A stretch of DNA of 64,000 nucleotides from contig CM119378.1 in NCBI GenBank assembly GCA_051294905.1, positions 19,406,001 to 19,470,000 on the forward strand, in the 5' to 3' direction. Each line of letters starts with the position of its first letter. Positions within the stretch are counted from its first letter, which is position 1. The stretch comes from Botryllus schlosseri (lineage: Eukaryota). A program made the position numbers and the translations under genes. Positions 26,701-59,667 of this stretch are shown piece after piece. Below the pieces are notes generated by a model. It had not been told where the DNA came from. It did no database searches and saw only the letters and a program-made list of their open reading frames with translations.

Positions 26701-26955
26701 GTGATGGAAAGTTTTGAAGAACAAGTAATACCAATTCTAGTTTCGAATTTGGTAAAGTGAGTAGTTTTACTTCAAGTTTTTACAGGTGAGGTTAGGCCAT
26801 ATCTCCATCTGCTTGAAGTGACTAGGCTGCAATTACAATCAGTGGATGTCACCGTGAAGAACTCTAATCACACGCTTTGGGATAATTATGCTGTCACTTT
26901 ACGCAAACCGAACGCAATTGTCACAAATCACCTTATGTGTCTTGTATTGACGCAG

Positions 26956-27130
26956 CGGAGATTTTGATGAAAATGGCTTTAGAAAGGTTGCCGGAATCCG
27001 CCAAGTCAAAGATAAAGGTATGAAAATGCGGAACTGGTAAGTCATGGTGTTTCTTCACTGCTGTGCTTCCTGAGCTGAAAGATGAACAACAAGCAAAAAA
27101 GCCATAAAATGAACCCTGCTTCATCTGAAG
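26956..27130 (+). pseudogene. Orphan, inverted copy of two CENP-C-like cassette exons (copy A)
   Basis: 62-nt exon 26956-27017 with AG/GT, (S)GDFDENGFRKVAGIRQVKDK, same length and phases as 44293-44354; the next exon keeps its donor (ASSE/gtac) but has lost its acceptor; the downstream intron sequence is also homologous. Confidence 0.75.
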
Positions 27131-27966
27131 GTACATTGTTCTTGTACATTTTCGCCCTGAAATATTGTTTTCATACCTGCTTATTTGCAATTCATATTAT
27201 TGCTTCCTTATTGAATTAGCTAGTTGTGTTTGAGTTTCAAAGGTAGTTAGTTCCAGTTCTGAGGTAGCTTGAAAAATTGAGCAACTACAATTCTGATTTT
27301 CACAGGTGTGGTTAGGCCATATCATAATAGGCTCACAATTCTGATACATCTCTGGCTCTAACATCAATCAATCAATGCCACCCGGAAAAAAAACTTGAAT
27401 CACACACTTTTGGACAATTATCCTCCCACTTTATGCACTTTGGAAATACCCATGAACCTCTAAACAGGTGCAGAGGAATCTACACATGAATGCATATGCG
27501 AATCCAAGGAAATGGAGAACGGTTGCACTGTTGTACAATGCTCCAAACAATGGCATGTCTGCTGTCAGTGCGTATCCTTTGATATTTTCATCGTAACATA
27601 ACTAGAGCTGAGCGCAATGATTCGAGTGCTCGGTGCTGGTTAAGATCAAAACATGAATACGACCACCCGAATAGGGGAGAGGAGGCCAAGATGAGACATG
27701 GATTTTTTCAGAGAACAATTTGTTGATTTCCAGAATCATTTAACCATGTAGCTCTCATAATGCCATTCTATAGCTCCACCATGTAACTGAGAGAGATAGG
27801 TTTGAGGTGTAACAGAAATATGCCAAAATATGTATTTTTTAGTTTCAGTAATATATTCTAGGTAACTTCTTTCAGAAAGACAGTCAGTGGAAGCAACCAT
27901 CCACGAAAGCAAACAAAGTTATTGAAGGTATCAGAAGCCTCCGACTTGGCAGGAATGTAAAAAATA

Positions 27967-39633: not shown

Positions 39634-39819
39634 TTATTCAGGAGGGGATGTGGAGTCATTTACGATTGACAAGGAGTAATAAATTACCGCGTTCTCATCA
39701 GTGGTGTTGCGCAGTCCGTAGTTGTTGTAGAATGGCACTTGGAAATGGGAACGCGGAGGCAGAATAACTTTTTCTCCCATCAGATTTAGCTCCACATCAC
39801 CCTTCAAGATAAGGCAGCT
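39634..39819 (-). CDS. CENPC: Terminal exon encoding a CENP-C/Mif2-type C-terminal cupin (dimerisation) domain
   Basis: Acceptor tttttttttacag; 62 open codons SCLILKGDVELNLMGEKVILPPRSHFQVPFYNNYGLRNTTDENAVIYYSLSIVNDSTSPPE*. Matches the pattern I recall for human CENP-C (GDLLCTL..IL..GDSFYVPSGNYYNIKN..EESVLLF) and yeast Mif2 (STFQIPAFNEYAIAN..DEAKMFF). Confidence 0.78.
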   Translation of the reverse strand, partial: SCLILKGDVELNLMGEKVILPPRSHFQVPFYNNYGLRNTTDENAVIYYSLSIVNDSTSPPE

Positions 39820-40381
39820 CTGTAAAAAAAAATGTTACGGTCACATTTATTCGGATCATATTAACCTGTTCCGGCACTGCCGGTTGCGGAAACAAATTAA
39901 AAGAATTAAGAAATGTTTCCGTCGTTTCAAGCCAGCCTGAGCGGCTCTGCAGTTCAGAAACATGTTGCAGCGCGGCATACTAAGTTGGAACTTTTTATCA
40001 ACCACTTACAATCAATGAAACACACAACCTTCACACCTGTTGTACAATTTGTACTGACACCTTCTTTCCCCCCCCCCATTAAATCAACAGATATTACCGT
40101 TTCATTTGAAAAAAACAACTTCCGCTTTGCAAAACACAAAACACAATAAAAAATGATAAGTATGATTGCAGGTTCAGTGTTGCATTGTCAAAAACACGTG
40201 GAAGATGACAGGTCTTGAATAAGTGTAGACTCATTCTGTCTAAAGAGATCTTCCTATGCAGCTTGATGCAAACTGTCTCCTGTCTGGTCTTTGTCAATCA
40301 AGATTGAGTTGGAGCCTTAGCTTAGCTTTACATCTCCTACTGCATCATTAGTGATACAAGAATTTATTCAACAACTTCAAC

Positions 40382-40872
40382 CAGGGTTGTAACCAAGTCA
40401 CAAAGCTCCGAGTCACAAGTCATTCTCACTTCAACGGTTTTGACTCGAGTCAAGTCGAGTCATTTTCAATTCACCACCAAGTCAAGTCCGAGTCCAAGTC
40501 ATCGAGCAGAAGTTCGAGTCCGAGTCATAGTATTATGACTCGAGTCTAAGTCCAAGTCATTGTGTTGACTGCTCAGTTACCAGTTAAAGTCTTGTTAAAG
40601 CCACTCTTATAACTCTGTTTGTTGATATCGAATGGTTCGCATTTATAATATACTAATTTTCCTCACTTGTATCAGTTTCTGGTCGCATTTTCAAGTACCA
40701 GTACCAATAGACGTAATCCCAATAGAGTGGTTACTTTACTGTTCTTCGAAATTACAATGAAATGTCGGTCTTGGCCGGCTGAATCTCGAGTCATGCGCAA
40801 TGACTCGAGTCCAAGTCGAGTCAATACGAGTCGAGTCATCAAAAAATCGTGACTCGAGTCATTACAACCCTG
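40382..40872. mobile_element. hAT-type MITE family 1, copy 2
   Basis: TIRs cagggttgtaa/ttacaaccctg; TSD acttcaac/acttcaag (7/8). Confidence 0.92.
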
Positions 40873-42679
40873 ACTTCAAGTATATCCCACAGCTGGGTGC
40901 TAATCCTTATATTTGTATTCACTTCGATAAATTCGTTTGTTTCAAAGAGTGAAACAAACACAGCATGCTACACATATGCAATCCATTTATATAAAACAGT
41001 CATTCATTCGGCCATGTAGTCAATCGGGATTCATGGTTCGTGAATGCCTGCCCCCTGTATCCATTCCCGGCCCAATCTCCGATCGCTAGTTTAGAACGCA
41101 TTGAGCGAAAGCTAAACGAATTTTCAATGAGCTTCCTGCAAGCTCATTGATGTTCTTTTATCAAGAACCTACTGCATGAGCTCTGACACCGTAGTTTATT
41201 CTAATTTCTTACATTTTGGACAACCTTAGTGTACGAAGACCAAATTTTCCAATAAATAAAACAACACACAACACAGAGTGTTGAGACTTCAATCGAGCCA
41301 GACTAGTGCGAACTACTGGATTTTTAAAATACTGAACTAGAACTGGAACTACTCACTTTTCAAAACTCACAACTGAAATTAAAACTAGAACTACTTGAAA
41401 ACTTCGCAACTATCTAATAACGGATATTACGAATTAGTGAATTGCAAATGAAAGGAGATATATCGAACAAGGTTTCGACCCCAAAACACGGCCATTGGAT
41501 ACCCCGCTGTTAGCAGTGATGACTCCGAGTTAGCCAAGGCTACAGGAACATCAAACACAACAGAACATCGGATTCACGATTCACCACAAATTATGGTGGT
41601 TGTCCGATTGATTTCTTTCCTAAATGCGCTGCTAGAACTACTCACATTAAAAATCCACAAATAATAGAACTGTTTTCTTATAAAAAATTTTGTTGTTCCA
41701 GTTTGGTAGTTTCTACAAATCCGACTGTAATGGGCATGCTGCCGTTAGCAGGTATGTGTTTGAGCTTTACAAGTAAAATGCGCTGCCACCTCATAATCAG
41801 TTGTACTCGGACTGGCCCAGCCCTAGTGGGCAACTATGACATGAACATGACGAGTGAGAGATATTAGTCTAGGGCAAGTTTTAGCAACTTTTTTTTACAG
41901 CTTCCGACAGCTTTCTAGATACTCAGAATCTATGTCTTATGATGTTTTAAGGTGTTTGGAGGGATTTTATAGCGCAACTTTTCTCTATTTTTCAAGCCAA
42001 TTATTACTGCGACTTTTATCAAATATTGCTTAAAAATGTAAAGGAGTGATTTTGAAAACATGCTATAAACTATTTCTAGTATGGTTCTATTCTCTTTGAT
42101 TTGCATAACAAAGAGCTATATGATGGGTTACGACCTTGCCCGAACAATATGTAAATATATCGCTTTATTGATTCTGTTGTTTAAATTTCAAATAATTTCC
42201 AATTTCACGAACGCCCACTCGAGACCGCCTAAAATTAAATTTTCGCTGGGGCACCCTTTTCGGGCTATTGATTTTGTTAAAGTCGCCAAGGGTGAGTTTT
42301 TCTGTAATGTCTTGGGTAAAGTTTGCAGACCTAGGGGGTTGGGACGTGTCTGATATTCGACTTGTTTTAGGGGGAGGAGATTATCGCTATGCTGTTTGGC
42401 TTTTGGGGTAAAATTATTCCTGCATTACGTAATTTTCTTGACGCATGCCGGGAAAAATGTAATTTTTGGCGGTTTCGTCTGACCGTTATAACTGGCGTAG
42501 TAACGAATTTGACAGCTCTGCAGGAGCTATGTTCTACAACGTCACCTTTCGAGTATCTCACACCCTGATAATTCAACAACAATTACGAATGCAACTTTTG
42601 TTGAAATTAAATGCAGCTTTCTCGCGATTATACTGCAACAAAAACTTGCCCTAGATAATCACTAAAACACTTACCAGAG

Positions 42680-43322
42680 TGCCGTTACCGCATGTGCGTA
42701 CCGGCTTTGTCGCATGGGGCTCCAGGGTGAAGAGACCCTGAACGGCTTTCGTCACCCCAGCTACGCATTCCGACCTGGTCATGAAAACACCTGGCACGAT
42801 CTCGTAACCCTCCGGTTTACTGGGCGAGCGTCCACAGTGACGATTATCTTGCGATACATCTGGAATTGCAGAGTAATACAGTTCAGAGGAGAGAGCCGAT
42901 GCAGACTCGGCAAGAAAGAGCTTTCTCTAGTGAAGCTATTCATCTCTCAATGGCTGTCGCGACACAAAAATACGAGAGAATCGCACCAGTCCGTGACAAT
43001 ATGATGTACATCACGTCAATGGAGTTGAAAATTCTCCACTTTTATGTTTTGACGGCGCTATCGCAATATTTGCTAATCGTTCGACTTCCGAACGAAACAT
43101 TATCGCGGATGAGACGTGTAATATATCTTGCGATAGAGTGAAGGCCGTTCGGGATTGCGGCAGTGCACTATATAGTATTTTATCGAGCCGGGTGGCTCGG
43201 CTCTGAAGACCATGTCATATCGAGCCTCCCGTCTACCTTGCATGTCGCATTTCACTGTTACATTTTTGTAGTGTTATGTTGATATGTAATGTATACGAAT
43301 AAAGATTCTCTCTCTCTCTCTC
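42680..43322 (+). mobile_element. 5'-truncated L1/Tx1-like 3' end with AATAAA and a (TC)8 tract
   Basis: CAYRLCRMGLQGEETLNGF (zf-RVT-like), IILRYIWNCRVIQFRG; aataaa at 43298-43303 followed by (tc)n at 43307-43322. Confidence 0.55.
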
Positions 43323-44171
43323 AGAAAAAGAATGTGTCAAGCTAAGTTGACAACTCAAAATTGGAATCGCGGAAGGAAGAAATACTTGATAATGAGATGA
43401 CAAGATGACACATGTTCATGTCCACATTACAAGATGAATAACAGAGACCATGGCCGCTAGCCCGCCAATGTCAGTCACTAGTATGCTCGACATCACGAAA
43501 GTACCGATGGGCCAGTATCTGTATTCTGTAGTCCTAGATATTATACATGTGATTGATGAACTTTGTCAAGTCGTTTCAACTATTCGACACCTTCTCGTTC
43601 ATATTATTTGTATTGTGTATTAGTATTGTGCATCTGAGTCTTGACTTCAAATAAGATACGGTACTTCGAATTTGAAAATATCTTAATGGCGGTATGGTAT
43701 TCCCAAACTGACCCAAATTTGGAGCATCAAGAAAATACTGTCAGTAAACATATAATTCGGCCTATGTAGTATCTACCTGTGTTTTTCAATGGTAATAATT
43801 AACATGAACTTATACTGCATTATCACGTAGGTACAAAACAGATGCTGTAGGGATCTGCGTCCCAATGTACACCAGCCCAGAACTACCATGATCGAGAGCG
43901 TCACATGATGGGGGAATTACCTGTTGTGGTTGTCTTGCAAAGCCAGTGTGCATAATGCTATATACTCTCAATCAAGATTCAGCGGTAGATAAAGTTAAGC
44001 TGTTGCTCACTTTAGATTTTGTGGAAATACTCAAGTAGGCATTTATAAGTACAGAACATCAATATCGCAACGGACAAAACATCGATATTCCCGAATTCCC
44101 GGCATGACGGTCAGCATCGCAGTTCAGAAACAACGACATTCTGGGGCAAAAAAATACGCAAACAATGGTAC

Positions 44172-44237
44172 CTTCGGATGCAGTGGGCTTTGCGGCCTTG
44201 CGGGCCTTCTTTTTTTCCACGGTTGCCGCATGGAGGG
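44172..44237 (-). CDS. CENPC: CENP-C-like cassette B, exon 5 (basic)
   Basis: ttttcccag acceptor, gtacc donor; 66 nt, phase 1 to 1: (A)LHAATVEKKKARKAAKPTASE. Confidence 0.68.
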
Positions 44238-44292
44238 CTGGGAAAATAAACGGGTAAACGCGACGACTTCAACAGGCACCGCACAGGCATAC

Positions 44293-44354
44293 CTTTATCT
44301 CTCACTTCCCGGATTCCGACAACTTGTTGAAAACGGTTTTCATCAAACTCTCCG
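44293..44354 (-). CDS. CENPC: CENP-C-like cassette B, exon 4
   Basis: gttgcag acceptor, gtatgc donor; 62 nt, phase 2 to 1: (S)GEFDENRFQQVVGIREVRDK; 55-nt intron to the next exon. Confidence 0.7.
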
Positions 44355-44711
44355 CTGCAACAACACAGGACACATAAGGAGGGCACGATCTGTGACGGTT
44401 GCACTGGGTTTGTTTAAAAATAACATATTTCCAAATTTTATATTAAATAAGTTTTTTTTCAAACTTTACTCCATGAAATTGTTTAGTTGTCAAAGCGAGT
44501 GATTCATAAAAAATTGGCTCAACTCCAACCCGAAAAGTGAAGTTATTGGGAGTACAAAATTTTGGATATAAAAAAAAATAGTATTCACGGTGGTATATCA
44601 TTTCATATATAATTATTGAACCAACCACCTTAAATATTTTTATTTAAAATTCTAATATAATTCGCTTCTACCAGTTGAAATTGAGCCAAATTGGGTGTGA
44701 AGAGTTATTAG

Positions 44712-47048
44712 TAGAGATGGGGTGAACGCGAGGTTCTTGTTTGGTCAACATTGCGTAAGAAGAAGGGATGGTGTGAGGTTCACGTTTGCGTTCTGTGTGT
44801 GAACCTCAGAAATTTAGAGGTTCACGTTCACAAACGAACCTTGGTAGGTTCTGCACTGTAAAACGTTTTTTTATATTACAATTTTCACATCAATACAACA
44901 CCTTTGGTTGAAATTTATTATATTTCGACTGCGGGCCATTCTATGCATGGCGATGGCAGCATTAAAAAATCAACACCAAACAAGCATGCACCTTGACAAT
45001 CTCAGAAATTTTACTCGCTTTGTTACAAAAGTTTGCTCGAAATATCCGTCTCTCCGTTTATGAATATTTAGTGACTCTCTGGTGTGAGCTTGACCCGCGA
45101 TCACACAACATCAACACAAAATACGCTACATGTGGGTCAGGGGCGTATCCAGAGCGCGAAAAAAAGGGGGGGTTTTGCGTTACGAATTTGGCTATTATGA
45201 CGTCATCAATGCGATCACTCGTCTTCACGCCATGGCGAATATCAACGATATACGATAATGTATAGTTTGATAATAAAAAGAGATTTGCGGTGAGTGGGAG
45301 ATGCACGAACACGATGCAGACATTGCCTGAAAATCGCGTTTTTTTATGGTATGATTAAAAGAAATTCGTAAATGCTCACATTTAGTCATGAGCCGGCAAA
45401 CGCCGCCCGTCTCCAAGCGCCTACTTCCGGCCAGAGATATGCGACTTTGTTAGGTTTTGACGACATTATGCGCACGCCTGGTAGTATCGCAGCGGACGAA
45501 CAAGCGCGGAATAGGGCGGTAGCATAAACGAGGGCGATCGCCAGAGGTGTGGTGTGAACAGTGTACGTCGTACACGAATGTGTGCTTTTCGATGGCTTTA
45601 CCAGCCGTACGGCTGAGCGTGTAGTACGCGCGAAGATAATTAGGCCTTAATTGCAAGCACGCAAGTCAGTCAATTATTACAGAGTACACACTGGGATAAT
45701 GACTTGATCTACAGAGAAATTTGTCAGCCGATATAATTAGGTTAACTTTACTACTAGGCCTACTCAATTCTCCCGTTCAGCGGCAACATAGGCCTGTATT
45801 TCAACTACAGCAAGCCACCTAACAATCGGGAACGTGGATTGCTAGGCTTGTATTTTGAATGTGACTGTCAATCGTAGGCCATTTCTCGCCGATAATTGCG
45901 AAGACAATGTGGATTTGAGAACAGCATTGTCGTACTGGTGCCGCCGTGTCTGCGTCTCGCTGATCAATCAACACACCGTGCAATTCTTGATTAGGATTTC
46001 AAGGCGAGCAGGTGCAGCGAATTCGCAGGCGCTGTTGATTGCCGACAACTTCGTCTTGGCAATTACGTATCGCGTCGACCAATTAGATTAGATTTTCCAA
46101 TAATGCGTCTCTCATTTTAGCAAGGCGAGAGAGAAATCGAGGGAAGAAAGTTGAGAACGTCTGCAACTGCCACAGCTGAAATGTAGCTGAACAAGGGCAG
46201 AATTCGTACGGAATTTGCGAGATATGATGACTTATTTTAACCTTTCGACTAATTCGGCGCATAATTCCAATATTTTGTAGGGGTTATAGACCCCCTAAAT
46301 AACATTAGGACACCATATTCGCCTTCTCATATGAAAAAACGGATATGTTAAACTAATAAATTAGCAAATATTAGTGGCTATATTTGACATCAATTTTTTG
46401 AATTTTGAAAAGGGGGGGGTTCCGACCCCCTAAAACCCCCCCTGGATACGCCACTGATGTGGGTGGTCAACGAATGATACTAATTCAACCACTCAATGAA
46501 ATTGATATTGTGGTCTGATGTAAAAAGTCTACCAGGCGTACTGGATCAATCTTGATTTCATATGTTTATTGTATCATAAAGAAAATTCTGTGCGATTGGG
46601 GTGTTGGCTACTGCTGTATAATTTGTTAATGGGGCAATATCGGTAGCAAGTATGGGAACCCGTTTTACACTCTGCTCAATATCAATGTCGAAATACTCAG
46701 ATGCGGAATACATTGCCAGTCTGGCGTAGTCCTCGTCAATATTGTTGGAAAAGCGACGGAAGATTGATTTTATGGGATTATCGTAAATCATTTGATTGCC
46801 CCAGTTCATACATTTAGCGACGTTTAAAACATTAGTATGTACTTCAGCATTGTGGCATTATGTGGCCCGAGTTTTCGCTCAGTATCGTTTACATAAATAT
46901 AGGTTAGCACTTCACTGAAATGTAGGGTTGGAATTAGCACTATGACGTCATCGACGTCATGAGGTTCACGTTCGAGTTCACACAGAACCTTGCAAAAAGG
47001 TTCGCGTTCACACGAACCTGAACCTTTCAGAGGTGCACACCATCTTTA
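44712..47048. mobile_element. Non-autonomous hAT element (gaggttcac/gtgaacc subterminal motifs)
   Basis: TIR tagagatggggtgaac / gtgcacaccatcttta; perfect 8-bp TSD gttattag. Confidence 0.88.
45138..46456. mobile_element. Non-autonomous hAT element, innermost of the nest
   Basis: TIR caggggcgtatccag / ctggatacgccactg (14/15); perfect 8-bp TSD atgtgggt. Confidence 0.92.
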
Positions 47049-47116
47049 GTTATTAGGCCAATAAAATTCGAAGAAAAATGTATTTTCAGACAACCCTAGT
47101 GTGTACGCCCACTTAC

Positions 47117-47207
47117 GAATAAATAAAGCTGTAACTGAAGCCAGGCTTTACTGGTAGCCGTATCCGGCTGCTCCTGCGGACTCCCGCTTGTTGGGTCACT
47201 GGAGGCA
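47117..47207 (-). CDS. CENPC: CENP-C-like cassette B, exon 3, carrying the CENP-C-motif-like peptide
   Basis: ttttttggcag acceptor, gtaagt donor; 91 nt, phase 1 to 2: (V)PPVTQQAGVRRSSRIRLPVKPGFSYSFIY; aligns to the recalled human motif VRRTKRTRLKPLEYWRGERIDY. Confidence 0.72.
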
Positions 47208-47798
47208 CTGCCAAAAAAAGGAGTTCGATTAGGAAGCGGCATCAAGTTGATCATTTCCCAACAACTCTGGTTTTTCAAGTTCTAATATCGATATGGTATC
47301 GACGATTTATAGCAGGGGCGTCCCACACTTATGTTACGGGGAATTTTTTGAAATGCCTTATTTCATCAACTCAATTCCACATTCCCAGAAAATTATTGCT
47401 TGTCTTGTCTCTCCGTTTCTCTACAGCAGTGGTATTGTATTTTGCATTTCAGGTGAATATCACCATATCACCATATCAAGAAGTACTGGTTAAAAACTAC
47501 TGATCCAAATCAAACACATTATACATTTTGCATTGAAAATAGTGATAGAAATGCACTGTCCAATCTACATAATACTGCAAATCCTTGCTAATGTCATATT
47601 GTGCATAATTCAACATTATTTGTCTGGGAGTATGAATTTGCTATGACGATGATGATTTGTTCAGAGATGACTTTATCTACAACGTGAAACACATAGCGAC
47701 TGGGTCGTATTGATTACGGCGTAGACGCAAAACATGAATATTCACGGATAACGTCAATCTTACACACCCACAATTGCACTCAAGACATGAATACTTAC

Positions 47799-47839
47799 CG
47801 GGAAATTCTTTAACCTCCAATTGAGGTTTCGGCGGATTC
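47799..47839 (-). CDS. CENPC: CENP-C-like cassette B, exon 2 (41 nt)
   Basis: tttttttctag acceptor, gtaagt donor; phase 2 to 1: (R)NPPKPQLEVKEFP. Confidence 0.68.
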
Positions 47840-48090
47840 CTAGAAAAAAATGCCGTCTTTGAACTTCCCATCACGTGAGATGAATATTAAAGGAACAAGT
47901 CGGATCATATTACCGAGTGACTGAGTCTGACATAACAATGTGCAAATGTGACGCGTGCAATGCAATGAAATTGACTACAACAGCTGGGCCAATTGTTTGG
48001 GACATAAGCTCGCCATTAAGTATGTAGGTAATTATGATGACAAACCTCATCACGATATGGGGAAGAAAATATTAGTCACAACAACAAGAA

Positions 48091-49263
48091 CATAGGCGCC
48101 GAACCTGGGCATGCAAGGCATGCCAGGCATGCCTAGACATTTTTTTAGGCATGCGGCATGCCTAGAATTCGGTTTGGCATGAATCGGCATAATCCCCGAT
48201 TGTGTTATTTAGAACGAATCGCAATGTATTTCCGTTTACGACATTACCTGCTACCGCTTATGTGAGCGAGGTAACCCGTTGCGCGCGGCCAATTAGCTAC
48301 AAGCGCGTTGCCAATTAACAAGATTTGTCTGTGCACAATGTAACGCGACGCGATCTCCCGCTGAGATGATCGCGAAATTGTGTCATTGATTGCCGTGCGT
48401 TCGGCAATCATCGCTTGGGACGCTTGCCTGCTTTATCGCGTCTCCTACAAGCCTAGTTTCACTCGCTTGAGCATGATGAACAATCACATCAGCAGTAGGC
48501 CCGGTGCCATCGCTTCCTGCACATTCGCATCTGCATTGGCGCACACGATATTATCGCTTGCCTACACAATCGCATCTGCAACAGGCCTGGTACGAAGGAT
48601 ATCATCGCTGGCCAACTATCGCGTCTAGAGGTGAGCAATGAGCATGCGTTGGCTCCCATCTCTCGAGCCTAGCATGCGTTAGCTCCAATCTTTCGATGGC
48701 TTGGTGACAATGCCGTTAGGTGTTTGTTGGTTAGCGATTGTAATTAAAGAGCGACATCGCTGACCTGAATGGCATCGAATGTCCGCAGACATGTGCGATT
48801 GTGAGTGCGCCGTGCATGCGTAAGTGAATCCTGCTAATACCTAAACATTACTATCGGAAGATGTGTGTCAACTGTCAAGGCTTGAGTTGTAAAAGACGGG
48901 AAAGGTTTGAACAACCTGAAATTGGTGCCATTATAAAACAGATTCCATAACAACTCTGACATTTTGCCTTGCGCAAATCGTCGCTGAGGTTACATAATAC
49001 GCGTTGATAAGCGGCGTATTTAATTGTTCGCTAGCGATCGGGACTCGCTAATTGACAGCACTTCCGGACTCGTCGACAAGCTTATCATACGCGCAAGTTT
49101 GTTAACACGCAGATATTGCATAATCGGCATTTATGCAGGCACTTAACCCTCATGAATTGATGCTATATTATCCCTAATTATCAATTCCGTCGGATCATGA
49201 CGTCTTCCTTTGTGACGTCATCGAACTCGCATGCCTAAGCAAAATTAGCGTTCGGCGCCTATG
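48091..49263. mobile_element. Non-autonomous hAT element (gcatgcc subterminal motifs)
   Basis: Perfect 14-bp TIR cataggcgccgaac; perfect 8-bp TSD aacaagaa; empty site at about 54600-54615 in the duplicate intron. Confidence 0.92.
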
Positions 49264-49430
49264 AACAAGAAGGTGCACAAACCCAAAGATTATGATACGA
49301 GTACTTTATTTGATATTTCGCACGATATGTCAAAGCCACTTTTGGAAATTATTTTCCTCCTATCTTCCAGTCTAGCCTAATTTCGACAAAGAATATCACC
49401 GTTACGGCTACTCGAGGACAACACCGTCAC

Positions 49431-49508
49431 CTGTTTGCCAATTTCTTCTTTTTCATTGACTTTTCCTGGCCTTTGCTAGCCGATCTTTTGCGGCTGGAAT
49501 TGTTGACC
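49431..49508 (-). CDS. CENPC: CENP-C-like cassette B, exon 1 (basic, NLS-like)
   Basis: catttcag acceptor, gtgac donor; 78 nt, phase 2 to 2: VNNSSRKRSASKGQEKSMKKKKLAN(R). Confidence 0.65.
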
Positions 49509-50045
49509 CTGAAATGTCGAACAGTCTGTCTTTCATTCGAAACCCATAGACTCAATAAAGGCGAACATGGACACAAGTAGTAAATTAATGGACAGGTCGA
49601 GAATAAAAAGGTGTTGCGAATTTTACAAATTCAAAAAGTCGGTTTAGTAGGACAAAGATGGGCAAACTATGGCCCGCACGACGCTAACTACTCCAGCTCT
49701 TTGAAAAAAAGTTCTCATGTCAATAAAAAGATTTCAATTTTCCGTCAAAAGTATACATTTTTTATGTCAAAAACCGATTGTCCCAATCATAACCTAACGG
49801 TAAGAATTGTGTTTGAATAGAGCAGAGAATTATCCGAAATAACATCAGCTTTTTATATACAATTTTTACTTTTATACGATAAACACGATTCTCTTTTCTA
49901 AAAATCAAGAACAGTCACACTCAGTTCTATAACAACATCACCTCTCTCGTCTGATCTGTCGAAGAAGTTCAGCGAGATGGCCACGATTTTTTGACGAACA
50001 CATTGGAATTTTGGGCAGACGGTGCACGCTTTCATGGGGCCAGAC

Positions 50046-52289
50046 CAGGGTTGGACAAACTTTTGAGCTCGCGGGTCGCATTCAAGAATTAAATCCATTC
50101 GCGAGCCGCACTCCATAAAATTGGGATACCGAGCCAAAATTCAAAATCGTTACTTGATCATATAGTGACAGACAACATGGAAATAATTTGAATGCATTGC
50201 TAGATTTAAAACAAACCAATCGTTGATATGATGATAACTTATACGCGTCAGAAACATTGACGAAAATTTATAAGCTGATCGTCCTCATTGTCAAAATTAG
50301 GAATGGAAGTAAAGGTTGTCCGAATTCTTAGAACTGGATGTAAATTTGAGTCTGCGAGCAGCGATATGTTTATGGATTTGCTGATTGTACTTATGGTTTA
50401 CCTCCAAGACACGCAATGCCGACAGCATCATAACCATGTTACCTTCAGATACAAATAACGAATCTTTCCAACACACCAGCGAATCGTTTTTCCAAGTACA
50501 GCACTATAAGTAATCAACTTGTTCATGTTGCCGATCAGGGGCGTAGCCAGTCGAAAAAAAATGGGGGATATTTATTAAAACGGGGAATATTTTTTGAAAA
50601 GATGATATTCGTTATGCTAACCACTTTATTGCGGTTTAATACACACAAATGCCGATACAACAAGGGTAAGATAATCTCGTTTGTGCTTACGTCTTTATAC
50701 ACATGAACATTTGCCAGTTATCTTAAAATATAGCTCTATTATGCGCAGTCGCATGCTACAGTAACAAACGGAAGGCGCTTTTGCCTTGCACGCCACTATT
50801 TGCCACAGCGAGTTTCATGCGCGCCGCGGATCATGACTCAACGCAGCAGGTGATCGATGATCACCTCGCAAATCACAATGTATCAGATCAGATGGAAGTA
50901 GCAAACAAATTTCGATGACAGCGAGGTATCTTGACCTTAATTACCAAAGCGAGGATGTAATCACGAAAGTACGCGCAGATCATATTACAGCACAGTGGAA
51001 GATCTCTCGATTTTGTGGTCAAAGACGAACACTCGAACAGTGAAGACACGCAAATGAATTTTAGTCTGTTGCCGTTTGATACAAACAATCTGGATTAATT
51101 TTGTTTGAAATCAATATGATTTTTACTGTCTGCCAAGATGGTGTAGTATTTTTGGTGTGTGGAGATGGTAAAGACTAATTACCACTCGAGCTTGTGCGAT
51201 TGCATCACGTGAATAACAGTGGCCTGGCGCAGGCTTAGGCTCGCGATCAAAATGCATTCCTAAACGCGTTTGCGGTGTAGAAGTGACAATTGCGAATTGT
51301 CGAGGCCAAGACTATAACTTCTGGTCAATACAATAGCACATCGAGTAGCACTATCACGCGCCGCGAGTCAGGGAGCGGCCTAATTTTCCTAGCCTCCAAT
51401 GTTTTACTACTGGCCAAGCGCGTTATAACAGGACAGTCAGCAGATGCGCCAGAGGCCTGAGACACGAAACGGCCGGAGACCTGGAAACCCACACATAACA
51501 ACCGAACTAAATGATCGCGAATTGGATCAATACATAATAGATTCCATACAGAACATTTGATTAGTACGATCTGTTTAGGTACTGTAGGGATCTGCTATCT
51601 CTAATGATACAAGCCTAGCGCGCATGTTCTAAAGGTTTGTTACTGTCAAACACGAAAACCAACTCGCGCGGTATCGAAATTTCAATGCGGGTGTTATTGT
51701 TACTGTGACTTCTGGCTCTGTAACTGGATGAGATGGGAGAGCCATGTGAGATGCGTTTTTCGGGCTTCCGCAGACGAGAGACCAATATGAGAAAAAGGCA
51801 TCACCGCACTGTTGTCTGATTGATCGATGGCGTGATGATGCCGCGCGGCAATTAGGGGATTATCGAATTAGAACAAGAAATATTAGATCAATGGAAATAT
51901 ATGTAAGACGGGGGGGGGGGGGGTATTTCGAGCCTCGAAACGGGGGGTATCGGACACCAATTATCTCCCCTGTCTACGCCACTGTTGCCGATCTAAAATC
52001 ACACTCGCTGTCAGAATTAAGTCATTCACGTTTCACTTTCTGCTATTTTTATTAATTGAAACCTTACAAAATGCATGGGCCACATGGTCGGGCTATCGCG
52101 CCATCAATAAAATGAAAAAATACCACGCTAAGAATCTAACTTATCATTATCATCTTGAAATATTTCACGAAAAACTTTAATCAAGTACCCACATACCCAT
52201 AGTAATGTGATTTTTAGTATGCATTTTATCAATATTTTTCCGTTTCTTGAGGCTTTCAAGGGCCGCGGGCCGTAGTTTGCCCACCCCTG
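50046..52289. mobile_element. MITE with cagggttggacaaac / gtttgcccacccctg ends, hosting the 50536-51984 element
   Basis: Terminal inverted similarity; only 5/8 TSD match (ggccagac/ggctacaa), so the pairing of ends is tentative. Confidence 0.5.
50536..51984 (+). mobile_element. Non-autonomous derivative sharing termini with the P52rIPK-like hAT family
   Basis: TIR caggggcgtag / ctacgccactg; perfect TSD ttgccgat; 5' part resembles 31964-32160 and 3' part (51645-51984) matches 20400-20719. Confidence 0.9.
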
Positions 52290-52353
52290 GGCTACAACTA
52301 GCAAAGTACAAAACAATATACCGCCAAATACATCATATAAAACCGCTACTAAC

Positions 52354-52399
52354 CTGTCATTGCTGGGAACCTCAACACGGTCTGATGGAGATTCACCGC
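52354..52399 (-). CDS. Candidate linker exon between cassettes C and B
   Basis: ttttgttcag acceptor, gttagt donor; 46 nt, phase 1 to 2: (G)GESPSDRVEVPSND(R); its end phase fits exon 49431-49508. Confidence 0.45.
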
Positions 52400-52679
52400 C
52401 TGAACAAAATACATACACATTTCAAATCATTTCTGGTTATCAGGTGGAATTGACATCTTTTTGGGTGGTAATTGCCTTAATGCTAGGCCTACAAGTTTGT
52501 CATGAACGACATCATAGCGAGCGGCACTCACACGCGGTAAAAACTACTGGATATTCAAAATACACATCTAGAACCAGAACTAGAGCTACAGCCATTAAAA
52601 ACCACAACTAGCAAACTAAACACACATTCAACTGATTAAATTCCAAAGCAACTCATTACTTTTTATCTTATCGTAATTG

Positions 52680-52808
52680 GATCGGCTGAAACGGTTCGTT
52701 TTACGGCTTTTTTTCTTTTTCATGGTTGCTGCATGGAGTGCAGCCGTATTATCTTTAACTTCCCGGATTCCCAGCACGTTCTTGAAGCCATTTTCATCTC
52801 TTTCGTCG
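52680..52808 (-). pseudogene. Cassette C exons 4+5, fused with the intron absent and the final donor lost
   Basis: Acceptor intact; (S)DERDENGFKNVLGIREVKDNTAALHAATMKKKKSRKTN reads through where cassette B has a 55-nt intron; the donor seen in B and A (gaag/gtac) is missing. Confidence 0.62.
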
Positions 52809-52858
52809 CTGCAACGTCACAAGATACATAAGCACGGCTTGATCCGTCACGTTTGCAC

Positions 52859-53380
52859 TAGGGTTGTTCACTTTTAATTCAAATATGATATTTGATAAAA
52901 TTGTTAGGTGGCTAATTTGGCATAATTCTAACAAGTCTAAGTTACCCTATTATTATTTCAACTTCTACAATCTACATGCTACTCCATGAGATTAGTTGTC
53001 TATACAAACGATACATAACAAAACTGGCTCACTTTCAACCCGTAAAAGCAAAGTTATTACAGTACAAAGTTGTGCATTAAAAAAATAGTATTTGCGGTAG
53101 GATATTCAATCACCAAACACCTTGAAAATTATTATTTGAAATCCTAAATTTACTGCTATAGGTTGCTTCTCTTGGTTGTGGTTGAGCTAAATTTGTATGC
53201 ATCGTTTTTAAAAAAAAAACTTTACATTATCGCTGGGCAGCCGGTAGCATGTGAATTTTTTTCTTCAATAAATTATGAATTTTTTAAATCTAATGCTCTC
53301 CAATCGAATTGAGCCAAATTGGGCGTGAAAAGCTATTAACCCAACAAATTTCAAGAAAAATGTACTTTTGAACAACCCTA
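52859..53380. mobile_element. MITE family 4
   Basis: TIR tagggttgttca / tgaacaacccta; TSD gtttgcac/gtgtgcat (6/8). Confidence 0.8.
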
Positions 53381-53399
53381 GTGTGCATGACCCACTTAC

Positions 53400-53490
53400 G
53401 AATAGATAAAGCTGTAGGTGGTGTCACGACGTACAGGTAGTCGTATCCGGCTGCTCCTGCGGACAGCAGTTTGTTGGGTCGCAGGAGGCA
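53400..53490 (-). CDS. CENPC: CENP-C-like cassette C, exon 3
   Basis: AG and gtaagt intact; 91 nt: (V)PPATQQTAVRRSSRIRLPVRRDTTYSFIY. Confidence 0.6.
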
Positions 53491-53830
53491 CTGACAAAAA
53501 GGGGGGTAGATTAAGAAGCTGCATCAAGTTAATCAGTATACATATCCCATTAAAAATTTTGATAGAAATGCACTGTACATAATGCTGCAAATCAGTGCTA
53601 ACTGCTAATACCATATTGTGTATAATTCAACAATACTTGTCTGGGATTATGAATTTGCTATGACAATGACTATTTCTACAACACGGAACCATAGTGTCCT
53701 ATATGGTGTCGACACAGGCAAATCTCACGCCTCAGTGAAATTGTATCACGTCACAATTTCCATTTGGCTACGGGCAATTTGACGGTAATTTTTCACCAGC
53801 TTGCCGAGCATTTAATTTGGTAAAACGGGT

Positions 53831-54144
53831 ATCAATCAAAAGCTGACTCTGCACTGATTACGAAAATATAAATTTTATTCCACTCGTGGCCCTGGAACTC
53901 CCACAATCAGCCTTGAATTTTTCATGGTTATGGAGATTGGCATTGGGACGCAGCAATGCTGAACAATGCTGTCTGGCGCTTCTTCTCTTGAGCTACTCTC
54001 TCGTTTTGCCAGACAGCATTGTTGCGTCCCAATGTCAATCTCCATAACAATGAAAAATTCGAGGCTGATTGTGGGAGTTCCAGGGCCACGAGCGGAATAA
54101 AATTTATATTTTCGTAATCAGTGCAGAGTCAGCTTTTGATTGAT
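53831..54144. repeat. Foldback element: about 137-147-bp inverted arms with a 30-nt loop
   Basis: 53831-53977 is the reverse complement of 54008-54144, with about 5 substitutions and a 10-bp duplication in the left arm; absent from the homologous intron of cassette B. Confidence 0.92.
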
Positions 54145-54259
54145 GGCGGAACAGATGGTGACCAGACCGGGACATATTGATTTTAGATGCAAACATGAAT
54201 ATTTAAGGATAAGGTAAATATTCAAAACCCACAATTGCACCTAAGACGTGAACACATAC

Positions 54260-54300
54260 CAGGATATTCTTTAACCTCGAATCGGGGTTTCGGCGGATTC
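54260..54300 (-). CDS. CENPC: CENP-C-like cassette C, exon 2
   Basis: ttttttccag acceptor, gtatgt donor; 41 nt: (R)NPPKPRFEVKEYP. Confidence 0.6.
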
Positions 54301-54771
54301 CTGGAAAAAATATGCTGTCTTTGAACTTCCAATCACATAAGATGATTATCACAGTAACAAGGCGGATATTATTACTGAGTGACTGACTCTGACATAGCAA
54401 TGTGCAAATGTGATGCGTGACGATGTGCAATGCAATGAAATTTACTAGAACAGCTGGAGCAATTTTTCGAGATGTAAGCTCGCCATACAGTGTGTGAGTG
54501 ATTATGATGACAAACCCACGTCAGGTGTTCTGTAAGTGGTTGATATTGCCCCCTGGGCATAAATTGAAAAGGCCGAAATGGAGAAGAAAATATTAGCCAC
54601 AACCACGAGAAGGAGCACGAACCCAAGATTATGATACAAGTATTTTATTTGATATTTGACACCATATGTCAAGGCCACTTTTTGAAATTATCATTCCCCT
54701 ATTTTTTACTCACTAGCGTGATATCGGCGTCGAATTTTGCCGTTACGACTACCCAAGGACAACACTGTCAC

Positions 54772-54867
54772 CTTTTTGCCAATTTCCTTTTTTTAACAGA
54801 CTTTTCCTGGCCCTTGCTGGACGATCTTTTGCGGCTGCGCTTCGATCTACCGTCAGATTTGCGGGCC
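54772..54867 (-). CDS. CENPC: CENP-C-like cassette C, exon 1
   Basis: tttttcag acceptor, gtgac donor; 96 nt, 18 nt longer than in B and in frame: ARKSDGRSKRSRKRSSSKGQEKSVKKRKLAK(R). Confidence 0.6.
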
Positions 54868-55184: not shown

Positions 55185-55630
55185 AAGGGTCGTAATGTTC
55201 CGATTTTCTGATTACTTGACTCGAGTCAATCTGTGTATTGACTCGGACTCTAACCAAGTCATATGACTCGAGGCTCAGATGGCCAAGACCGACATTTCAT
55301 CACAATTTCGAAGAATAGTAAAGTAACCAATAGTAAGTCTATCGGTTGTGGTACTTGAAAATGCGACCAGAAACTGCTAAAAGTGAGGAAAATAGGCACA
55401 TTATAAATGCGAACCATTCGACATCACTCAAGACAGTTATAAAAGGAGGGTTTAACATTACTTCAACTGGATATTGAGCAGTTAACACAACGACTCCGAC
55501 TCGACCCTCCTCTTGCCGACTTGGACTTGACTTGGTGGTGAATTGAAAATGACTCGACTTGACTCGGCTCAAAACTATAAAAGTGAAATTGATTTGTGAC
55601 TCGGAGCCTTGTGACTTGGTTACTACCCTG
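55185..55630. mobile_element. hAT-type MITE family 1, copy 3 (reverse orientation, internally deleted)
   Basis: Degenerate TIRs aagggtcgtaat / ttactaccctg; perfect TSD tagcaact. Confidence 0.85.
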
Positions 55631-56349
55631 TAGCAACTAGAACTACAACTCAAAACCCTTAAAAATCCACAACAAACCAACTAATAACTGATAATACGAA
55701 TTACTGAAATACAAATGAGCTGAGAAATATTGAAGATAGAATCGGTATTTAAAAGCGACGGGGTTTCCAGTTTGAAATGGGCAGGGATTTCAACCTCAAA
55801 AACCCATCACCTGGCTGCGATACTGATATTAGTGATGACTCTGAGCTCACCCATGGGCCATGGGGTAAAATAAAATCAATCGGAAGTTGAACGCTTTGTA
55901 AAATAGACGGAAAATATTTTATTTCCGGAGTCGTAGGTAGAGCAATATGCATGACAAAGAAATAGTTGGTGCATCCAATGGCTACAATTTCAACTTGAAA
56001 TCAAACATCCTTATGATAGGCAAGTTATTCAAGTATGGTTTCCAGAGTTCACAGTAAACGATATCTACAAAAGAACGTTAAGGACGAAGGTTTTTCACGG
56101 TCCAATGAAATTTAAAACACGTTTGTGTTTGTCAGAGTACTGAAATTTTTCATGCATAAGGAGCAAAATTTCACCGATTTTTGTCCTAAAATCGGGGGGG
56201 GGTGCAGAACTGCGCTCTATGCATGGGTATAACAATTCTTGAAAAGAATCTCCCCCCGAAATGAAACTTAGAATCGCACTTTTCTTCATGTTCGTTTGTC
56301 AATCGCATATCAAATTAGCCCATCCTGCCGAGTAATTCATATTATCAGT

Positions 56350-57015: not shown

Positions 57016-57649
57016 GGAAGCAATATCAATATCGGGTATCAATTCCACATAACGTTATAAGCAGTCATGCAAAAACAAAATAACGCCACATACACGATAC
57101 ACAAGTACTACTAACCTGCCATTGTTTGAATCTCCGCCGTTTTGGTTTGTGGGACGGTCTGAAAAGAATATTCATTTAACAAAAATGAAGACCGCAGACC
57201 GATGTTCTTACTAACTTCATTTATTTGGACTCAAACTGACGTTGGATTGGTCACCCGAGGGGCCTGCGACCAGAGATTATGAGGGACTGTTGTTACTGCC
57301 TGCTTTTCTATACTATCTTCTTTCACTTTTCATTCAGTGTGCAGTGCATGCCTCCTCTTTACATCGCCTAGCTAAGCCAATGTGGGTGTCTGATTTCAAA
57401 AACAACTCCAAGTTGTTTCGACACCTTCCTATCTTTTCACTCCATCGCAATTTTGTGGCGTATTGAACTGATAAAAATTGCTAACGAACCAAACTGAGCC
57501 GAGAATTAGCAGTAAATACTGCAGATCAAAATAATCCCGTTTTCAATCACTATGCTAAGACAGTACAACATTCCTGTGTTGAGCTGGCGAAGAACAACAA
57601 ACGCTAGATTGTGTGGGATAAAATCGCCATTATCAGTAGCCCTGCTCAA

Positions 57650-59459: not shown

Positions 59460-59667
59460 CGAAGTGCACAGTTGTAGAACCACGTGGCTCGAATTGGCCC
59501 TCTGTTTTTAGCCAATCGGCCAGAGTCTTGCCTCCCTTCTTCTTCTTCGCCGACGGGGCAGAGTGTTCGAGGTCGGAACTCGATTTAGGTTCAACTGACG
59601 ACCTTTTTCGGCTGGCAAGGTGACGGCTGTGCTGCTGGGCCGAGATACTTCTGCTGCTACAGGCCGT
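59460..59667 (-). CDS. Candidate exon, S/K/R-rich; possibly an upstream CENP-C exon
   Basis: ttcttcttttag acceptor, gtaaga donor; 208 nt open, phase 0 to 1: TACSSRSISAQQHSRHLASRKRSSVEPKSSSDLEHSAPSAKKKKGGKTLADWLKTEGQFEPRGSTTVHF. Could instead belong to the adjacent hAT relic. Confidence 0.5.

What the first reader, a model, noticed from the sequence alone, without database searches (positions are those of the whole stretch)
39634..54867. Putative CENP-C gene with a tandemly duplicated CENP-C-motif exon cassette
Seen: on the minus strand, five small exons (78, 41, 91, 62, 66 nt) at 44172-49508 have canonical GT-AG sites and splice in frame to 112 aa. A second copy of the cassette lies at 52680-54867, with identical phases for exons 1-3 and an in-frame 18-nt indel. 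A phase 1-to-2 exon at 52354-52399 could join the two cassettes. Downstream on the same strand is a terminal exon with a Mif2/CENP-C-type cupin. Established: CENP-C has a nucleosome-binding CENP-C motif followed by a basic linker and a C-terminal cupin dimerisation domain. Exon duplications in grass CENP-C and Cenp-C paralogs in Drosophila are known. Inference: this lineage duplicated the CENP-A-nucleosome-binding module, giving a two-motif or alternatively spliced CENP-C, or one live and one dying cassette. I do not know of this being described for this kind of genome.
Basis: partly seen in the sequence, partly recalled or inferred. Interest (0 to 1): 0.88.

Follow-up and report, generated by a model that had tools for sequence, protein, structure and literature searches.

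The report
CENP-C gene with duplicated motif block
A centromere-protein (CENP-C) gene carries two tandem copies of the exon block that encodes its nucleosome-binding motif; the one informative RNA data set shows the upstream copy in use, while the first two exons of the downstream copy, which is still fully intact, get no reads.

Summary
On the minus strand, all listed exons exist with canonical GT-AG sites and splice in frame. The two cassettes are a genuine genomic tandem duplication, introns included, about 80% identical.

Corrections:
- The repeat unit has six exons. The "joining" exon at 52354-52399 is a duplicate of an exon at 57116-57158.
- The upstream copy has exons 4 and 5 fused and has lost the ancestral last donor.
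- The cupin is split. Its N-terminal half lies in an unreported exon at 42675-42859.

The terminal exon passes Pfam's threshold for Mif2/CENP-C cupin, and its best PDB hits are Mif2/CENP-C.

RNA-seq reads from one run show splicing 57116-exon→C1→C2→C3, at an estimated 4-20x depth on the upstream copy. All five differences from the reference are synonymous. There are no reads on the joining exon or on B1, so a two-motif protein is not the main product in that sample.

The downstream copy keeps every splice site and an open frame (P≈0.002 if it had been neutral since the duplication). B-versus-C dN/dS is 0.32. I read it as a conditionally used spare module (0.45) or a recently retired one (0.22).

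Not shown: the join from the cassettes to the cupin exons, and the expression of B2-B5. This is a new variant of a known kind. Unchecked earlier scan notes mention CENP-C-like loci on other DNA of this genome.

The parts
59460..59667 (-). Candidate upstream exon U1 (208 nt, phase 0 to 1), Ser/Lys-rich. It fits the frame of the next exon.
   Evidence: Open frame with a polypyrimidine-AG acceptor and a GTAAGA donor. No RNA or homology support. No Pfam hit.
57116..57158 (-). Exon L0 (43 nt), first exon of the upstream repeat unit and twin of exon L.
   Evidence: 16 X23 reads run from C1 into letters that match 57119-57148 with one mismatch. Its 3' end and downstream intron are homologous to exon L.
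54772..54867 (-). Exon C1 (96 nt), basic stretch with an NLS-like run.
   Evidence: C1->C2 joint in 5 reads with CT..AC ends. Read depth present. 83% identical to B1, with an 18-nt in-frame indel.
54260..54300 (-). Exon C2 (41 nt).
   Evidence: Joints to C1 (5 reads) and to C3 (6 reads). 88% identical to B2.
53400..53490 (-). Exon C3 (91 nt), carrying the CENP-C motif VRRSSRIRLP followed by YSFIY.
   Evidence: C2->C3 joint in 6 reads. The motif core is a 23-nt run identical to B3, longer than any identical run in 950 aligned intron bases, where the longest is 17.
52660..52808 (-). Exon C4 (149 nt), equal to exons 4 and 5 fused. The ancestral donor is lost and a new GTAATG donor at 52659 keeps phase 1.
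   Evidence: Read depth on the exon and none in the bin 52392-52578 downstream. Three-way alignment with B and the third copy shows the intron deletion and the lost donor. The 52715 variant is synonymous.
52542..52647 (-). Repeat (TE-like) fragment directly after C4, at the junction of the two units.
   Evidence: Similar copies at 41311-41448, 55635-55703 and 27184-27261. RNA contigs of X1 and X2 cover it, then run into letters not in the window.
52354..52399 (-). Exon L (46 nt), first exon of the downstream unit.
   Evidence: Canonical splice sites, phase 1 in and 2 out. No X23 read reaches 52392-52399.
49431..49508 (-). Exon B1 (78 nt).
   Evidence: Canonical sites. Zero depth in all four runs laid.
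47799..47839 (-). Exon B2 (41 nt).
   Evidence: Canonical sites. Expression not tested.
47117..47207 (-). Exon B3 (91 nt), carrying the CENP-C motif VRRSSRIRLP followed by FSYSFIY.
   Evidence: Expression not tested.
44293..44354 (-). Exon B4 (62 nt), followed by a 55-nt intron.
   Evidence: Reading through the intron shifts the frame; splicing it out restores similarity to C4.
44172..44237 (-). Exon B5 (66 nt), Lys-rich, with the ancestral GAAG|GTAC donor.
42675..42859 (-). Exon Y (185 nt, phase 1 to 0), the inferred N-terminal half of the cupin.
   Evidence: It is the only open stretch with a good donor in phase 0 upstream of the terminal exon whose sequence reads cupin-like. It makes B5, or C4, in frame with exon T. 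No Pfam or PDB hit on its own, so the assignment is inferred.
39634..39819 (-). Terminal exon T, the C-terminal half of a Mif2/CENP-C cupin, plus the stop codon.
   Evidence: Pfam CENP-C_C at 32.2 bits, above the gathering score of 29. The top three PDB hits are Mif2 or CENP-C. A 57%-identical fragment exists in another sample. The exon plus its 3' flank is held at 0.47-0.90 by five small contig sets of unknown kind.
26898..27180 (+). Third, partial and inverted copy of exon 4, the short intron and exon 5.
   Evidence: 65% identical to 44119-44418 over 304 nt, E 4e-25. Its exon 4 frame is open and its exon 5 is out of frame.

Best explanation
This is the 3' half of a real CENP-C-family gene.

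**The duplication.** An old tandem duplication (about 20% nucleotide divergence) copied a six-exon block. The block encodes a basic stretch, the CENP-C motif and a Lys-rich linker. The block starts and ends in phase 1, so using either copy, or both, keeps the frame into the two cupin exons.

**Usage.** The upstream copy (L0, C1-C4) is the one spliced into mRNA in the sampled tissue, and it is under purifying selection today. The downstream copy (L, B1-B5) is skipped there. It is too intact to be long dead. I commit to it being a spare nucleosome-binding module that is used conditionally, for example in another tissue or stage, either replacing the upstream copy or added to it.

**How the protein would work (inferred from the family).**
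- The R-x-R of the motif docks on the H2A-H2B acidic patch.
- The aromatic run after it (YSFIY) contacts the CenH3 tail.
- The Lys/Arg flanks bind DNA or act as a nuclear localisation signal.
- The cupin dimerises.

**Shown versus inferred.**
- Shown: the duplication, the reading frames, the cupin family assignment, the L0-C1-C2-C3 splicing, and the absence of L and B1 reads.
- Inferred: C4 joins exon Y, B is used elsewhere, and all the biochemistry.
For: - **Duplication.** It includes the introns.
- **Frames.** All three splice variants are open to the T stop codon.
- **Family.** Pfam CENP-C_C scores above its threshold, and the best PDB hits are Mif2/CENP-C.
- **RNA.** X23 shows junctions L0->C1 (16 reads), C1->C2 (5) and C2->C3 (6). 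My estimate from the bin means is 4-20x depth on the C exons. L and B1 get zero reads.
- **Selection on C.** Five of five read-versus-reference differences in C exons are synonymous. One of these is inferred from a junction letter and one from a 0.79-agreement consensus.
- **B is intact.** It keeps all 12 splice dinucleotides, has no stop codon and carries only in-frame indels. In simulation, P is 0.0024 if neutral since the duplication, 0.05 if neutral for half that time, and 0.22 for a quarter.
- **dN/dS.** B versus C over exons 1-4 gives 0.32, bootstrap 0.17-0.60.
- **Symmetric branches.** Against the third copy, B has 39 lineage-specific changes and C has 38.
- **Splice sites.** B's sites look as good as C's.
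- **Motif core.** It is identical in both copies and is the longest identical run in the alignment.
Against: - Only one RNA data set was informative, it was sampled at 6%, and its tissue is unknown.
- No read evidence exists for B2-B5, Y or T, nor for the C3->C4 and C4->Y joins.
- Exons 1-3 (83% identical) are no better conserved than the alignable intron blocks (80%). Measured against introns, constraint therefore looks weak.
- Four X23 reads leave C4 at 52726 into letters not found in the window. In frame they reach a stop after three codons. This is unexplained.
- Block-wise alternative use of six exons would be unusual.
Confidence: 0.45

Rival explanations
1. The downstream copy B is a recently retired pseudo-cassette. 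It was spliced in for most of the time since the duplication, perhaps giving a two-motif protein, and is now skipped everywhere and starting to decay.
For: L and B1 get no reads where the C exons have an estimated 4-20x depth. Exons are no better conserved than introns. Under neutrality for the last quarter of the time since the duplication, B would still look intact with P 0.22.
Against: B has no defect at all: 12 of 12 splice dinucleotides, an open frame and a perfect motif core. It is C, not B, that carries the structural damage, namely the lost intron and lost donor. Averaged over retirement times, intactness is about six times less likely than under continued use (my integration).
Confidence: 0.22
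2. Both cassettes are spliced into one mRNA as the main product. This would give a CENP-C with two CENP-C motifs per chain, four per dimer.
For: C4-L-B1 is in frame and all sites are canonical. Mammalian CENP-C has two related nucleosome-binding motifs (PMC8245036).
Against: X23 has no reads on L or B1, although 16 reads cross L0->C1. About 10-16 would be expected at L-B1.
Confidence: 0.08
3. The RNA reads come from a nearly identical paralogous CENP-C locus elsewhere in the genome, and the locus in this window is a silent duplicate.
For: At the three places listed in the run's table of differences, every read carries the non-reference letter. Four reads diverge at 52726 into sequence absent from the window. 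Unchecked earlier notes report CENP-C-like loci on other pieces of this genome. A third partial copy in the window shows that the segment is prone to duplication.
Against: Divergence is only about 1% and all of it is synonymous, which fits allelic variation between individuals. Reads match the C-specific structure, namely the L0 junction and the fused exon 4/5.
Confidence: 0.12
4. The cassette is a multicopy, transposon-carried gene fragment, and the locus is not a working CENP-C gene.
For: The region is TE-rich. A repeat fragment sits at the unit junction. There are three copies of exons 4-5 in 64 kb.
Against: The transcripts are correctly spliced and carry only synonymous variants. The copies are local and colinear with unique introns. 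The cupin exon passes the CENP-C_C threshold. No transposase or terminal repeats bound the unit, although no dedicated search for them was made.
Confidence: 0.04

Closest known systems
CENP-C / Mif2 family (Pfam PF11699 cupin plus the CENP-C motif)
   Same: It has the Arg-rich motif half (RRSxRxR), a basic linker, and a C-terminal cupin that scores above Pfam's threshold and best matches the Mif2 and CENP-C cupins in the PDB.
   Different: The aromatic half of the motif lacks the Y/F-W pair that contacts the CENP-A tail in rat and human (PMC6776904). Instead a Y-S-F-I-Y run begins two residues later. The motif-encoding exons are present twice.
Duplicated exons 9-12 of grass Cenpc genes (Talbert et al. 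2004, PMC549713)
   Same: Both are intragenic tandem exon duplications in a fast-evolving CENP-C.
   Different: In that paper the CENPC motif is described as single (abstract). The duplicated grass exons are 9-12, and the maize model has 14 exons in which the motif lies upstream of the end of exon 13. My reading is that the grass duplications lie outside the motif exon. Here the duplicated block contains the motif itself.
Central region plus CENP-C motif of mammalian CENP-C (PMC8245036, PMC6776904)
   Same: There are two related nucleosome-binding motifs in one gene.
   Different: In mammals both motifs are constitutively in one protein and are anciently diverged. Here the copies are a younger block duplication, and the sampled mRNA carries only one.
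Cenp-C gene paralogs in the Drosophila subgenus (bioRxiv 10.1101/134817)
   Same: CENP-C function is duplicated, with possible subfunctionalisation such as germline bias.
   Different: Those are whole-gene duplicates. Here only an internal module is duplicated within one gene.
Tandem exon duplication with mutually exclusive splicing (general phenomenon; from my own knowledge)
   Same: The exon copies are equal in phase and similar in size, lie in tandem, and only one is seen in mRNA.
   Different: Known cases usually involve single exons. This would be a six-exon block, and exclusive use is not demonstrated.

Membership tests
CENP-C / Mif2 | CENP-C motif, Arg-rich half with the acidic-patch anchor (RRxxRxR) | tested here: met
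   VRRSSRIRLP is encoded identically in B3 and C3. The anchor spacing was compared with human R742/W751 (PMC8245036).
CENP-C / Mif2 | CENP-C motif, aromatic pair (Y/F-W) about 8-9 residues after the anchor Arg | tested here: not met
   There is no Trp. At anchor +9, B has Phe and C has Thr. Both copies have Y-S-F-I-Y starting at +11. The canonical contacts are described in PMC6776904.
CENP-C / Mif2 | C-terminal Mif2/CENP-C-type cupin (PF11699) | tested here: met
   Exon T scores 32.2 bits against a gathering score of 29, at profile positions 39-83 of 85, while Cupin_2 scores 19.4 bits against its cut-off of 27.2. The top PDB hits are 2vpv Mif2, 7on1_C (the alignment shows a Mif2 sequence; the molecule name is uninformative) and 7x85 CENP-C, but their E-values are weak, 0.07-0.2. 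The N-terminal half in exon Y is inferred only. A language-model search returns generic bacterial Cupin_2 fragments.
CENP-C / Mif2 | Motif and cupin in one transcript, motif upstream of cupin | tested here: inconclusive
   Same strand, right order, and in frame through exon Y. No reads were laid on Y or T. The T region is present in five contig sets of unknown kind.
CENP-C / Mif2 | Binds CenH3 nucleosomes and localises to centromeres | not testable with these tools
   Needs experiment.
Mutually exclusive tandem exon (block) duplication | Copies with the same phase whose alternative use keeps the frame | tested here: met
   Both units start and end in phase 1. The C-only, B-only and C+B models are all open to the stop codon.
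Mutually exclusive tandem exon (block) duplication | Each copy found in mRNA, but not both together | tested here: inconclusive
   Only copy C was seen, in one run. B2-B5 were not examined.
KNL2 / M18BP1 (proteins with a CENP-C-like motif) | CENPC-like motif combined with a SANTA domain and no cupin | tested here: not met
   A CENP-C-type cupin follows on the same strand. Pfam found no SANTA domain in any exon scanned, but the 5' part of the gene lies outside the window.
Transposon-captured multicopy gene fragment | Many dispersed copies bounded by TE termini | tested here: inconclusive
   Within 64 kb there are two full local copies and one partial inverted copy.

The most novel reading that the evidence does not exclude
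The intact downstream block is a regulated alternative CenH3-nucleosome-binding module. The cell would switch, or add, a whole six-exon CENP-C-motif cassette in a particular context such as germline or meiosis. The two versions differ exactly in the residues after the arginine anchor that read the CenH3 tail: FSYSF in B against TTYSF in C.
Probability: 0.4. Interest if true: 0.7.

Novelty: new variant of a known kind. Interest (0 to 1): 0.5.

Why it matters
CENP-C is the hub that ties the kinetochore to CenH3 chromatin, and its motif is what reads the centromeric nucleosome.

I found no description of a tandem duplicate of the motif-encoding block kept intact inside one gene. Grass exon duplications appear to lie outside the motif exon, and the two mammalian motifs are ancient and constitutive.

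If the second block is used conditionally, it would be a natural case of swapping the nucleosome-reading module of CENP-C. That would allow a direct test of how the aromatic half of the motif tunes CenH3 recognition. If it is merely retiring, the locus is a snapshot of how a two-motif CENP-C arises or is lost.

The non-canonical aromatic half, with no Trp in either copy, deserves comparison with this organism's CenH3 tail.

Tried and rejected
**Homologue searches**
- An exhaustive HMMER search with the terminal exon gave a single 74-aa fragment at 57% identity from a Logan assembly. Its contig DNA could not be fetched.
- Word-index protein searches with exon Y's open stretch and with exon T found nothing. 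No orthologue or full-length protein was therefore available to guide the model or to polarise changes.

**Family scans**
- Pfam on the single motif, linker, U1, C1 and B1 exons gave nothing significant.
- The PDB search with exon Y gave nothing.
- The protein atlas returned only generic bacterial cupin fragments.

**Organism**
- I tried to identify it through a transposase ORF. The nearest named hit was a hydrozoan protein at 47% identity, which is not decisive.
- A literature search for the related sample's accession gave no papers.

**RNA data**
- RNA contig sets X1, X2 and X12 covered only repeat-derived parts of the stretch and none of the C exons, so they say nothing about either cassette.
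- The loose-end sequences at 52726 and 52673 were searched in the window on both strands, allowing mismatches, and were not found.

**Exon candidates**
- I rejected an apparent exon at 41430-41573 because it is a repeat also present at 55.6-55.85 kb.

**Left out**
- I did not type the spliced protein into Pfam, structure prediction or length-limited searches, because it has no reference.


Full report
**Observation.** Each has an AG acceptor and a GT donor, and they share one open frame.

The second cassette is a genomic duplicate, not a chance resemblance. blastn aligns 52.7-55.1 kb to 44.3-49.8 kb in nine colinear blocks at 75-87% identity, with E-values down to 3e-78, and the blocks cover introns as well as exons. 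Realigned, exons 1, 2 and 3 are 83%, 88% and 80% identical, and nine intron blocks (950 aligned bases) are 80% identical. The 18-nt indel in exon 1 is in frame.

**Anatomy beyond the finding.** Four things were missed or need correcting.

- *The joining exon belongs to the repeat.* The 3' end of the joining exon L (52354-52399) and its downstream intron match 57072-57124. A 43-nt exon L0 lies at 57116-57158 with the same phases. The repeat unit is therefore six exons, L plus 1-5. It begins and ends in phase 1, so a C-only, a B-only or a C+B mRNA stays open to the stop codon.
- *Copy C has four exons after L0.* Its last exon (52660-52808) is exons 4 and 5 fused. An internal deletion removed all but 6 nt of the 55-nt intron that B keeps. 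The ancestral exon-5 donor (GAAG|GTAC in B and in a third copy) reads CAATTAC in C, and the next GT, at 52659, happens to keep phase 1. A repeat fragment at 52542-52647 follows directly.
- *The cupin is split across two exons.* The terminal exon T (39634-39819) matches only positions 39-83 of the 85-position CENP-C_C profile. I listed all open stretches that end in phase 0 at a good donor between B5 and T. One of them, 42675-42859, has an acceptor in phase 1 and a cupin-like sequence. It links B5, or C4, to T in frame. On its own it has no Pfam or PDB hit, so its role as the N-terminal half of the cupin is an inference.
- *There is a third copy, and a possible upstream exon.* An inverted, partial copy of exon 4, the short intron and exon 5 lies at 26898-27180 on the plus strand, 65% identical over 304 nt. 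A further candidate upstream exon at 59460-59667 fits the frame but has no other support.

**Family.** Exon T scores 32.2 bits on Pfam CENP-C_C (gathering score 29, E 1.3e-7), against 19.4 bits on Cupin_2, which is below its cut-off. The three best PDB sequence matches are a Mif2 cupin (2vpv), a chain of 7on1 whose aligned stretch is the same Mif2 sequence, and a CENP-C (7x85). Their E-values are weak, 0.07-0.2. A language-model search of a mostly bacterial atlas returns only generic Cupin_2 fragments. That confirms the fold but not the subfamily.

Both copies of exon 3 encode VRRSSRIRLP, the Arg-rich half of the CENP-C motif. The canonical aromatic pair is absent. In rat and human it is Y725/W726 or W530/W531, and it packs against the CENP-A tail, while the arginines sit on the acidic patch (PMC6776904). 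At anchor +9, B has Phe and C has Thr, and both have Y-S-F-I-Y from +11.

The order of motif, basic linker and C-terminal cupin is that of CENP-C. I file this as a CENP-C-family gene with a non-canonical aromatic half.

**RNA.** The three contig-based runs covered only repeat-derived parts and none of the C exons, so they are uninformative. The raw-read run X23 (bulk RNA-seq, about 6% of the run read) gave the following.

- A C1->C2 joint at exactly 54772/54300 with CT..AC ends (5 reads).
- A C2->C3 joint (6 reads).
- 16 reads running off the upstream end of C1 into letters that match L0 at 57119-57148 with one mismatch.

I estimate depth on the C exons at about 4-20x from the bin means. The bin containing B1 has zero depth. 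No read reaches 52392-52399 of exon L, and the bin 52392-52578 is empty, so there is no read-through beyond C4 either. With 16 reads on L0->C1, a constitutive C+B mRNA should have given about 10-16 reads on L-B1.

All differences between these reads and the reference are synonymous third-position changes in my frame. They are 54828, 54282, 52715, a letter at 54261 inferred from the junction, and one in L0 from a 0.79-agreement consensus. With about a quarter of random changes being synonymous, five of five has P about 0.001. The upstream cassette is therefore a coding sequence under constraint.

Exon T with its 3' flank is held at 0.47-0.90 by five small contig sets of unknown kind. That suggests it is transcribed but does not prove it.

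Not shown: the C3->C4 and C4->Y joins, and any statement about B2-B5.

**State of the downstream copy.** B has no defect. It keeps 12 of 12 splice dinucleotides, has no stop codon, shows only in-frame length differences from C, and its splice sites look as good as C's.

I simulated neutral decay using the substitution rate, indel rate and indel lengths measured in the intron blocks. The chance of B staying this intact is 0.0024 if it was neutral since the duplication, 0.05 for half that time, and 0.22 for a quarter.

Nei-Gojobori dN/dS between B and C over exons 1-4 is 0.32, bootstrap 0.17-0.60. At the point estimate, that value cannot be reached if one branch had been fully neutral throughout.

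With the third copy as a third taxon, lineage-specific changes are A 28, B 39 and C 38. B and C have therefore changed equally, and the three copies are about equally old.

Against constraint, exons are no better conserved than the alignable intron blocks. Synonymous divergence (0.56) also exceeds intron divergence (about 0.23), which I cannot fully explain.

**Reading.** The duplication is real and old, the gene is CENP-C-like, and in the sampled tissue the upstream module is the one in use. I weighed the intactness of B (likelihood about 1 if functional, about 0.17 averaged over retirement times) against its absence from one bulk sample. On that basis I favour conditional use of B (0.45) over recent retirement (0.22).

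A two-motif main product is unlikely (0.08).

A silent-locus scenario, in which the reads come from a near-identical paralog, keeps 0.12 for three reasons. Every read carries the non-reference letter at the places listed in the run's table of differences. Four reads leave C4 at 52726 into 30 letters absent from the window, and in frame these give a stop after three codons. Unchecked earlier scan notes list CENP-C-like loci on other pieces of this genome.

A transposon-borne fragment is unlikely (0.04).

**Comparison with what is known.**
- Talbert et al. (PMC549713) describe CENP-C as having a single motif and report duplicated exons 9-12 in grasses. Going by their gene models, these appear to lie outside the motif exon.
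- Human CENP-C has two related nucleosome-binding motifs, both constitutive, and a dimer binds two nucleosomes (PMC8245036).
- Drosophila has whole-gene Cenp-C paralogs (10.1101/134817).
- Searches for reports of two or multiple CENP-C motifs found nothing resembling a tandem duplicate of the motif cassette.

I rate this a new variant of a known kind, of moderate interest. The interest would rise if B proves to be a regulated alternative module.

**Limits.** The organism is unknown to me, and the transposase lead is not decisive. No orthologue or full-length protein could be retrieved. The spliced protein could not be handed to Pfam or to structure prediction because it has no reference. The gene's 5' part lies beyond the window.

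Noticed in passing
window 26898-27180 (+): A third, inverted, partial copy of CENP-C exon 4, the short intron and exon 5, about 12 kb beyond the gene's 3' end. It is flanked by the same repeat fragments that follow C4. Its exon 4 frame is open and its exon 5 is out of frame.
   Followed up: partly
window 52726 (minus-strand exon C4): Four X23 reads match C4 down to 52726, then continue with 30 or more letters not present anywhere in the window. In frame this gives a stop after three codons. At least three other reads continue normally through 52715. This could be a structural allele, a paralog or an odd isoform.
   Followed up: partly
window 52579-52673: RNA contigs of X1 and X2 (depth about 15) cover this stretch, then jump at 52673 to letters not in the window. 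On the plus strand, 52673 is followed by GTAATT, so this may be a plus-strand (antisense or repeat-derived) spliced transcript.
   Followed up: no
window 53690-54260 (intron C2-C3): An insertion absent from copy B, containing an inverted repeat around 53860-54110 that gives mirror-image ORFs on both strands. It has very high depth in RNA contigs (up to thousands), so it is an expressed repeat family.
   Followed up: no
window 9422-10525, 28570-29379 (+): Pogo/Tc5-type transposase ORFs (Pfam DDE_1, E 9e-25 and 4e-17). The nearest named relative is a Hydractinia protein at 47% identity. The whole 1-39 kb stretch looks transposon-rich.
   Followed up: partly
window 40400-40880, 55240-55640, 62140-62770 (-): Copies of a repeat rich in GACTCGAGTC-like units sit in the introns of the gene. 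Adjacent 'gttctagtt' segments recur at 41.3-41.6, 52.5-52.65 and 55.6-55.85 kb.
   Followed up: no
window 44238-44292: A very short (55-nt) intron between B4 and B5. It is kept at 57 nt in the third copy but is deleted, leaving 6 nt in frame, in copy C.
   Followed up: yes
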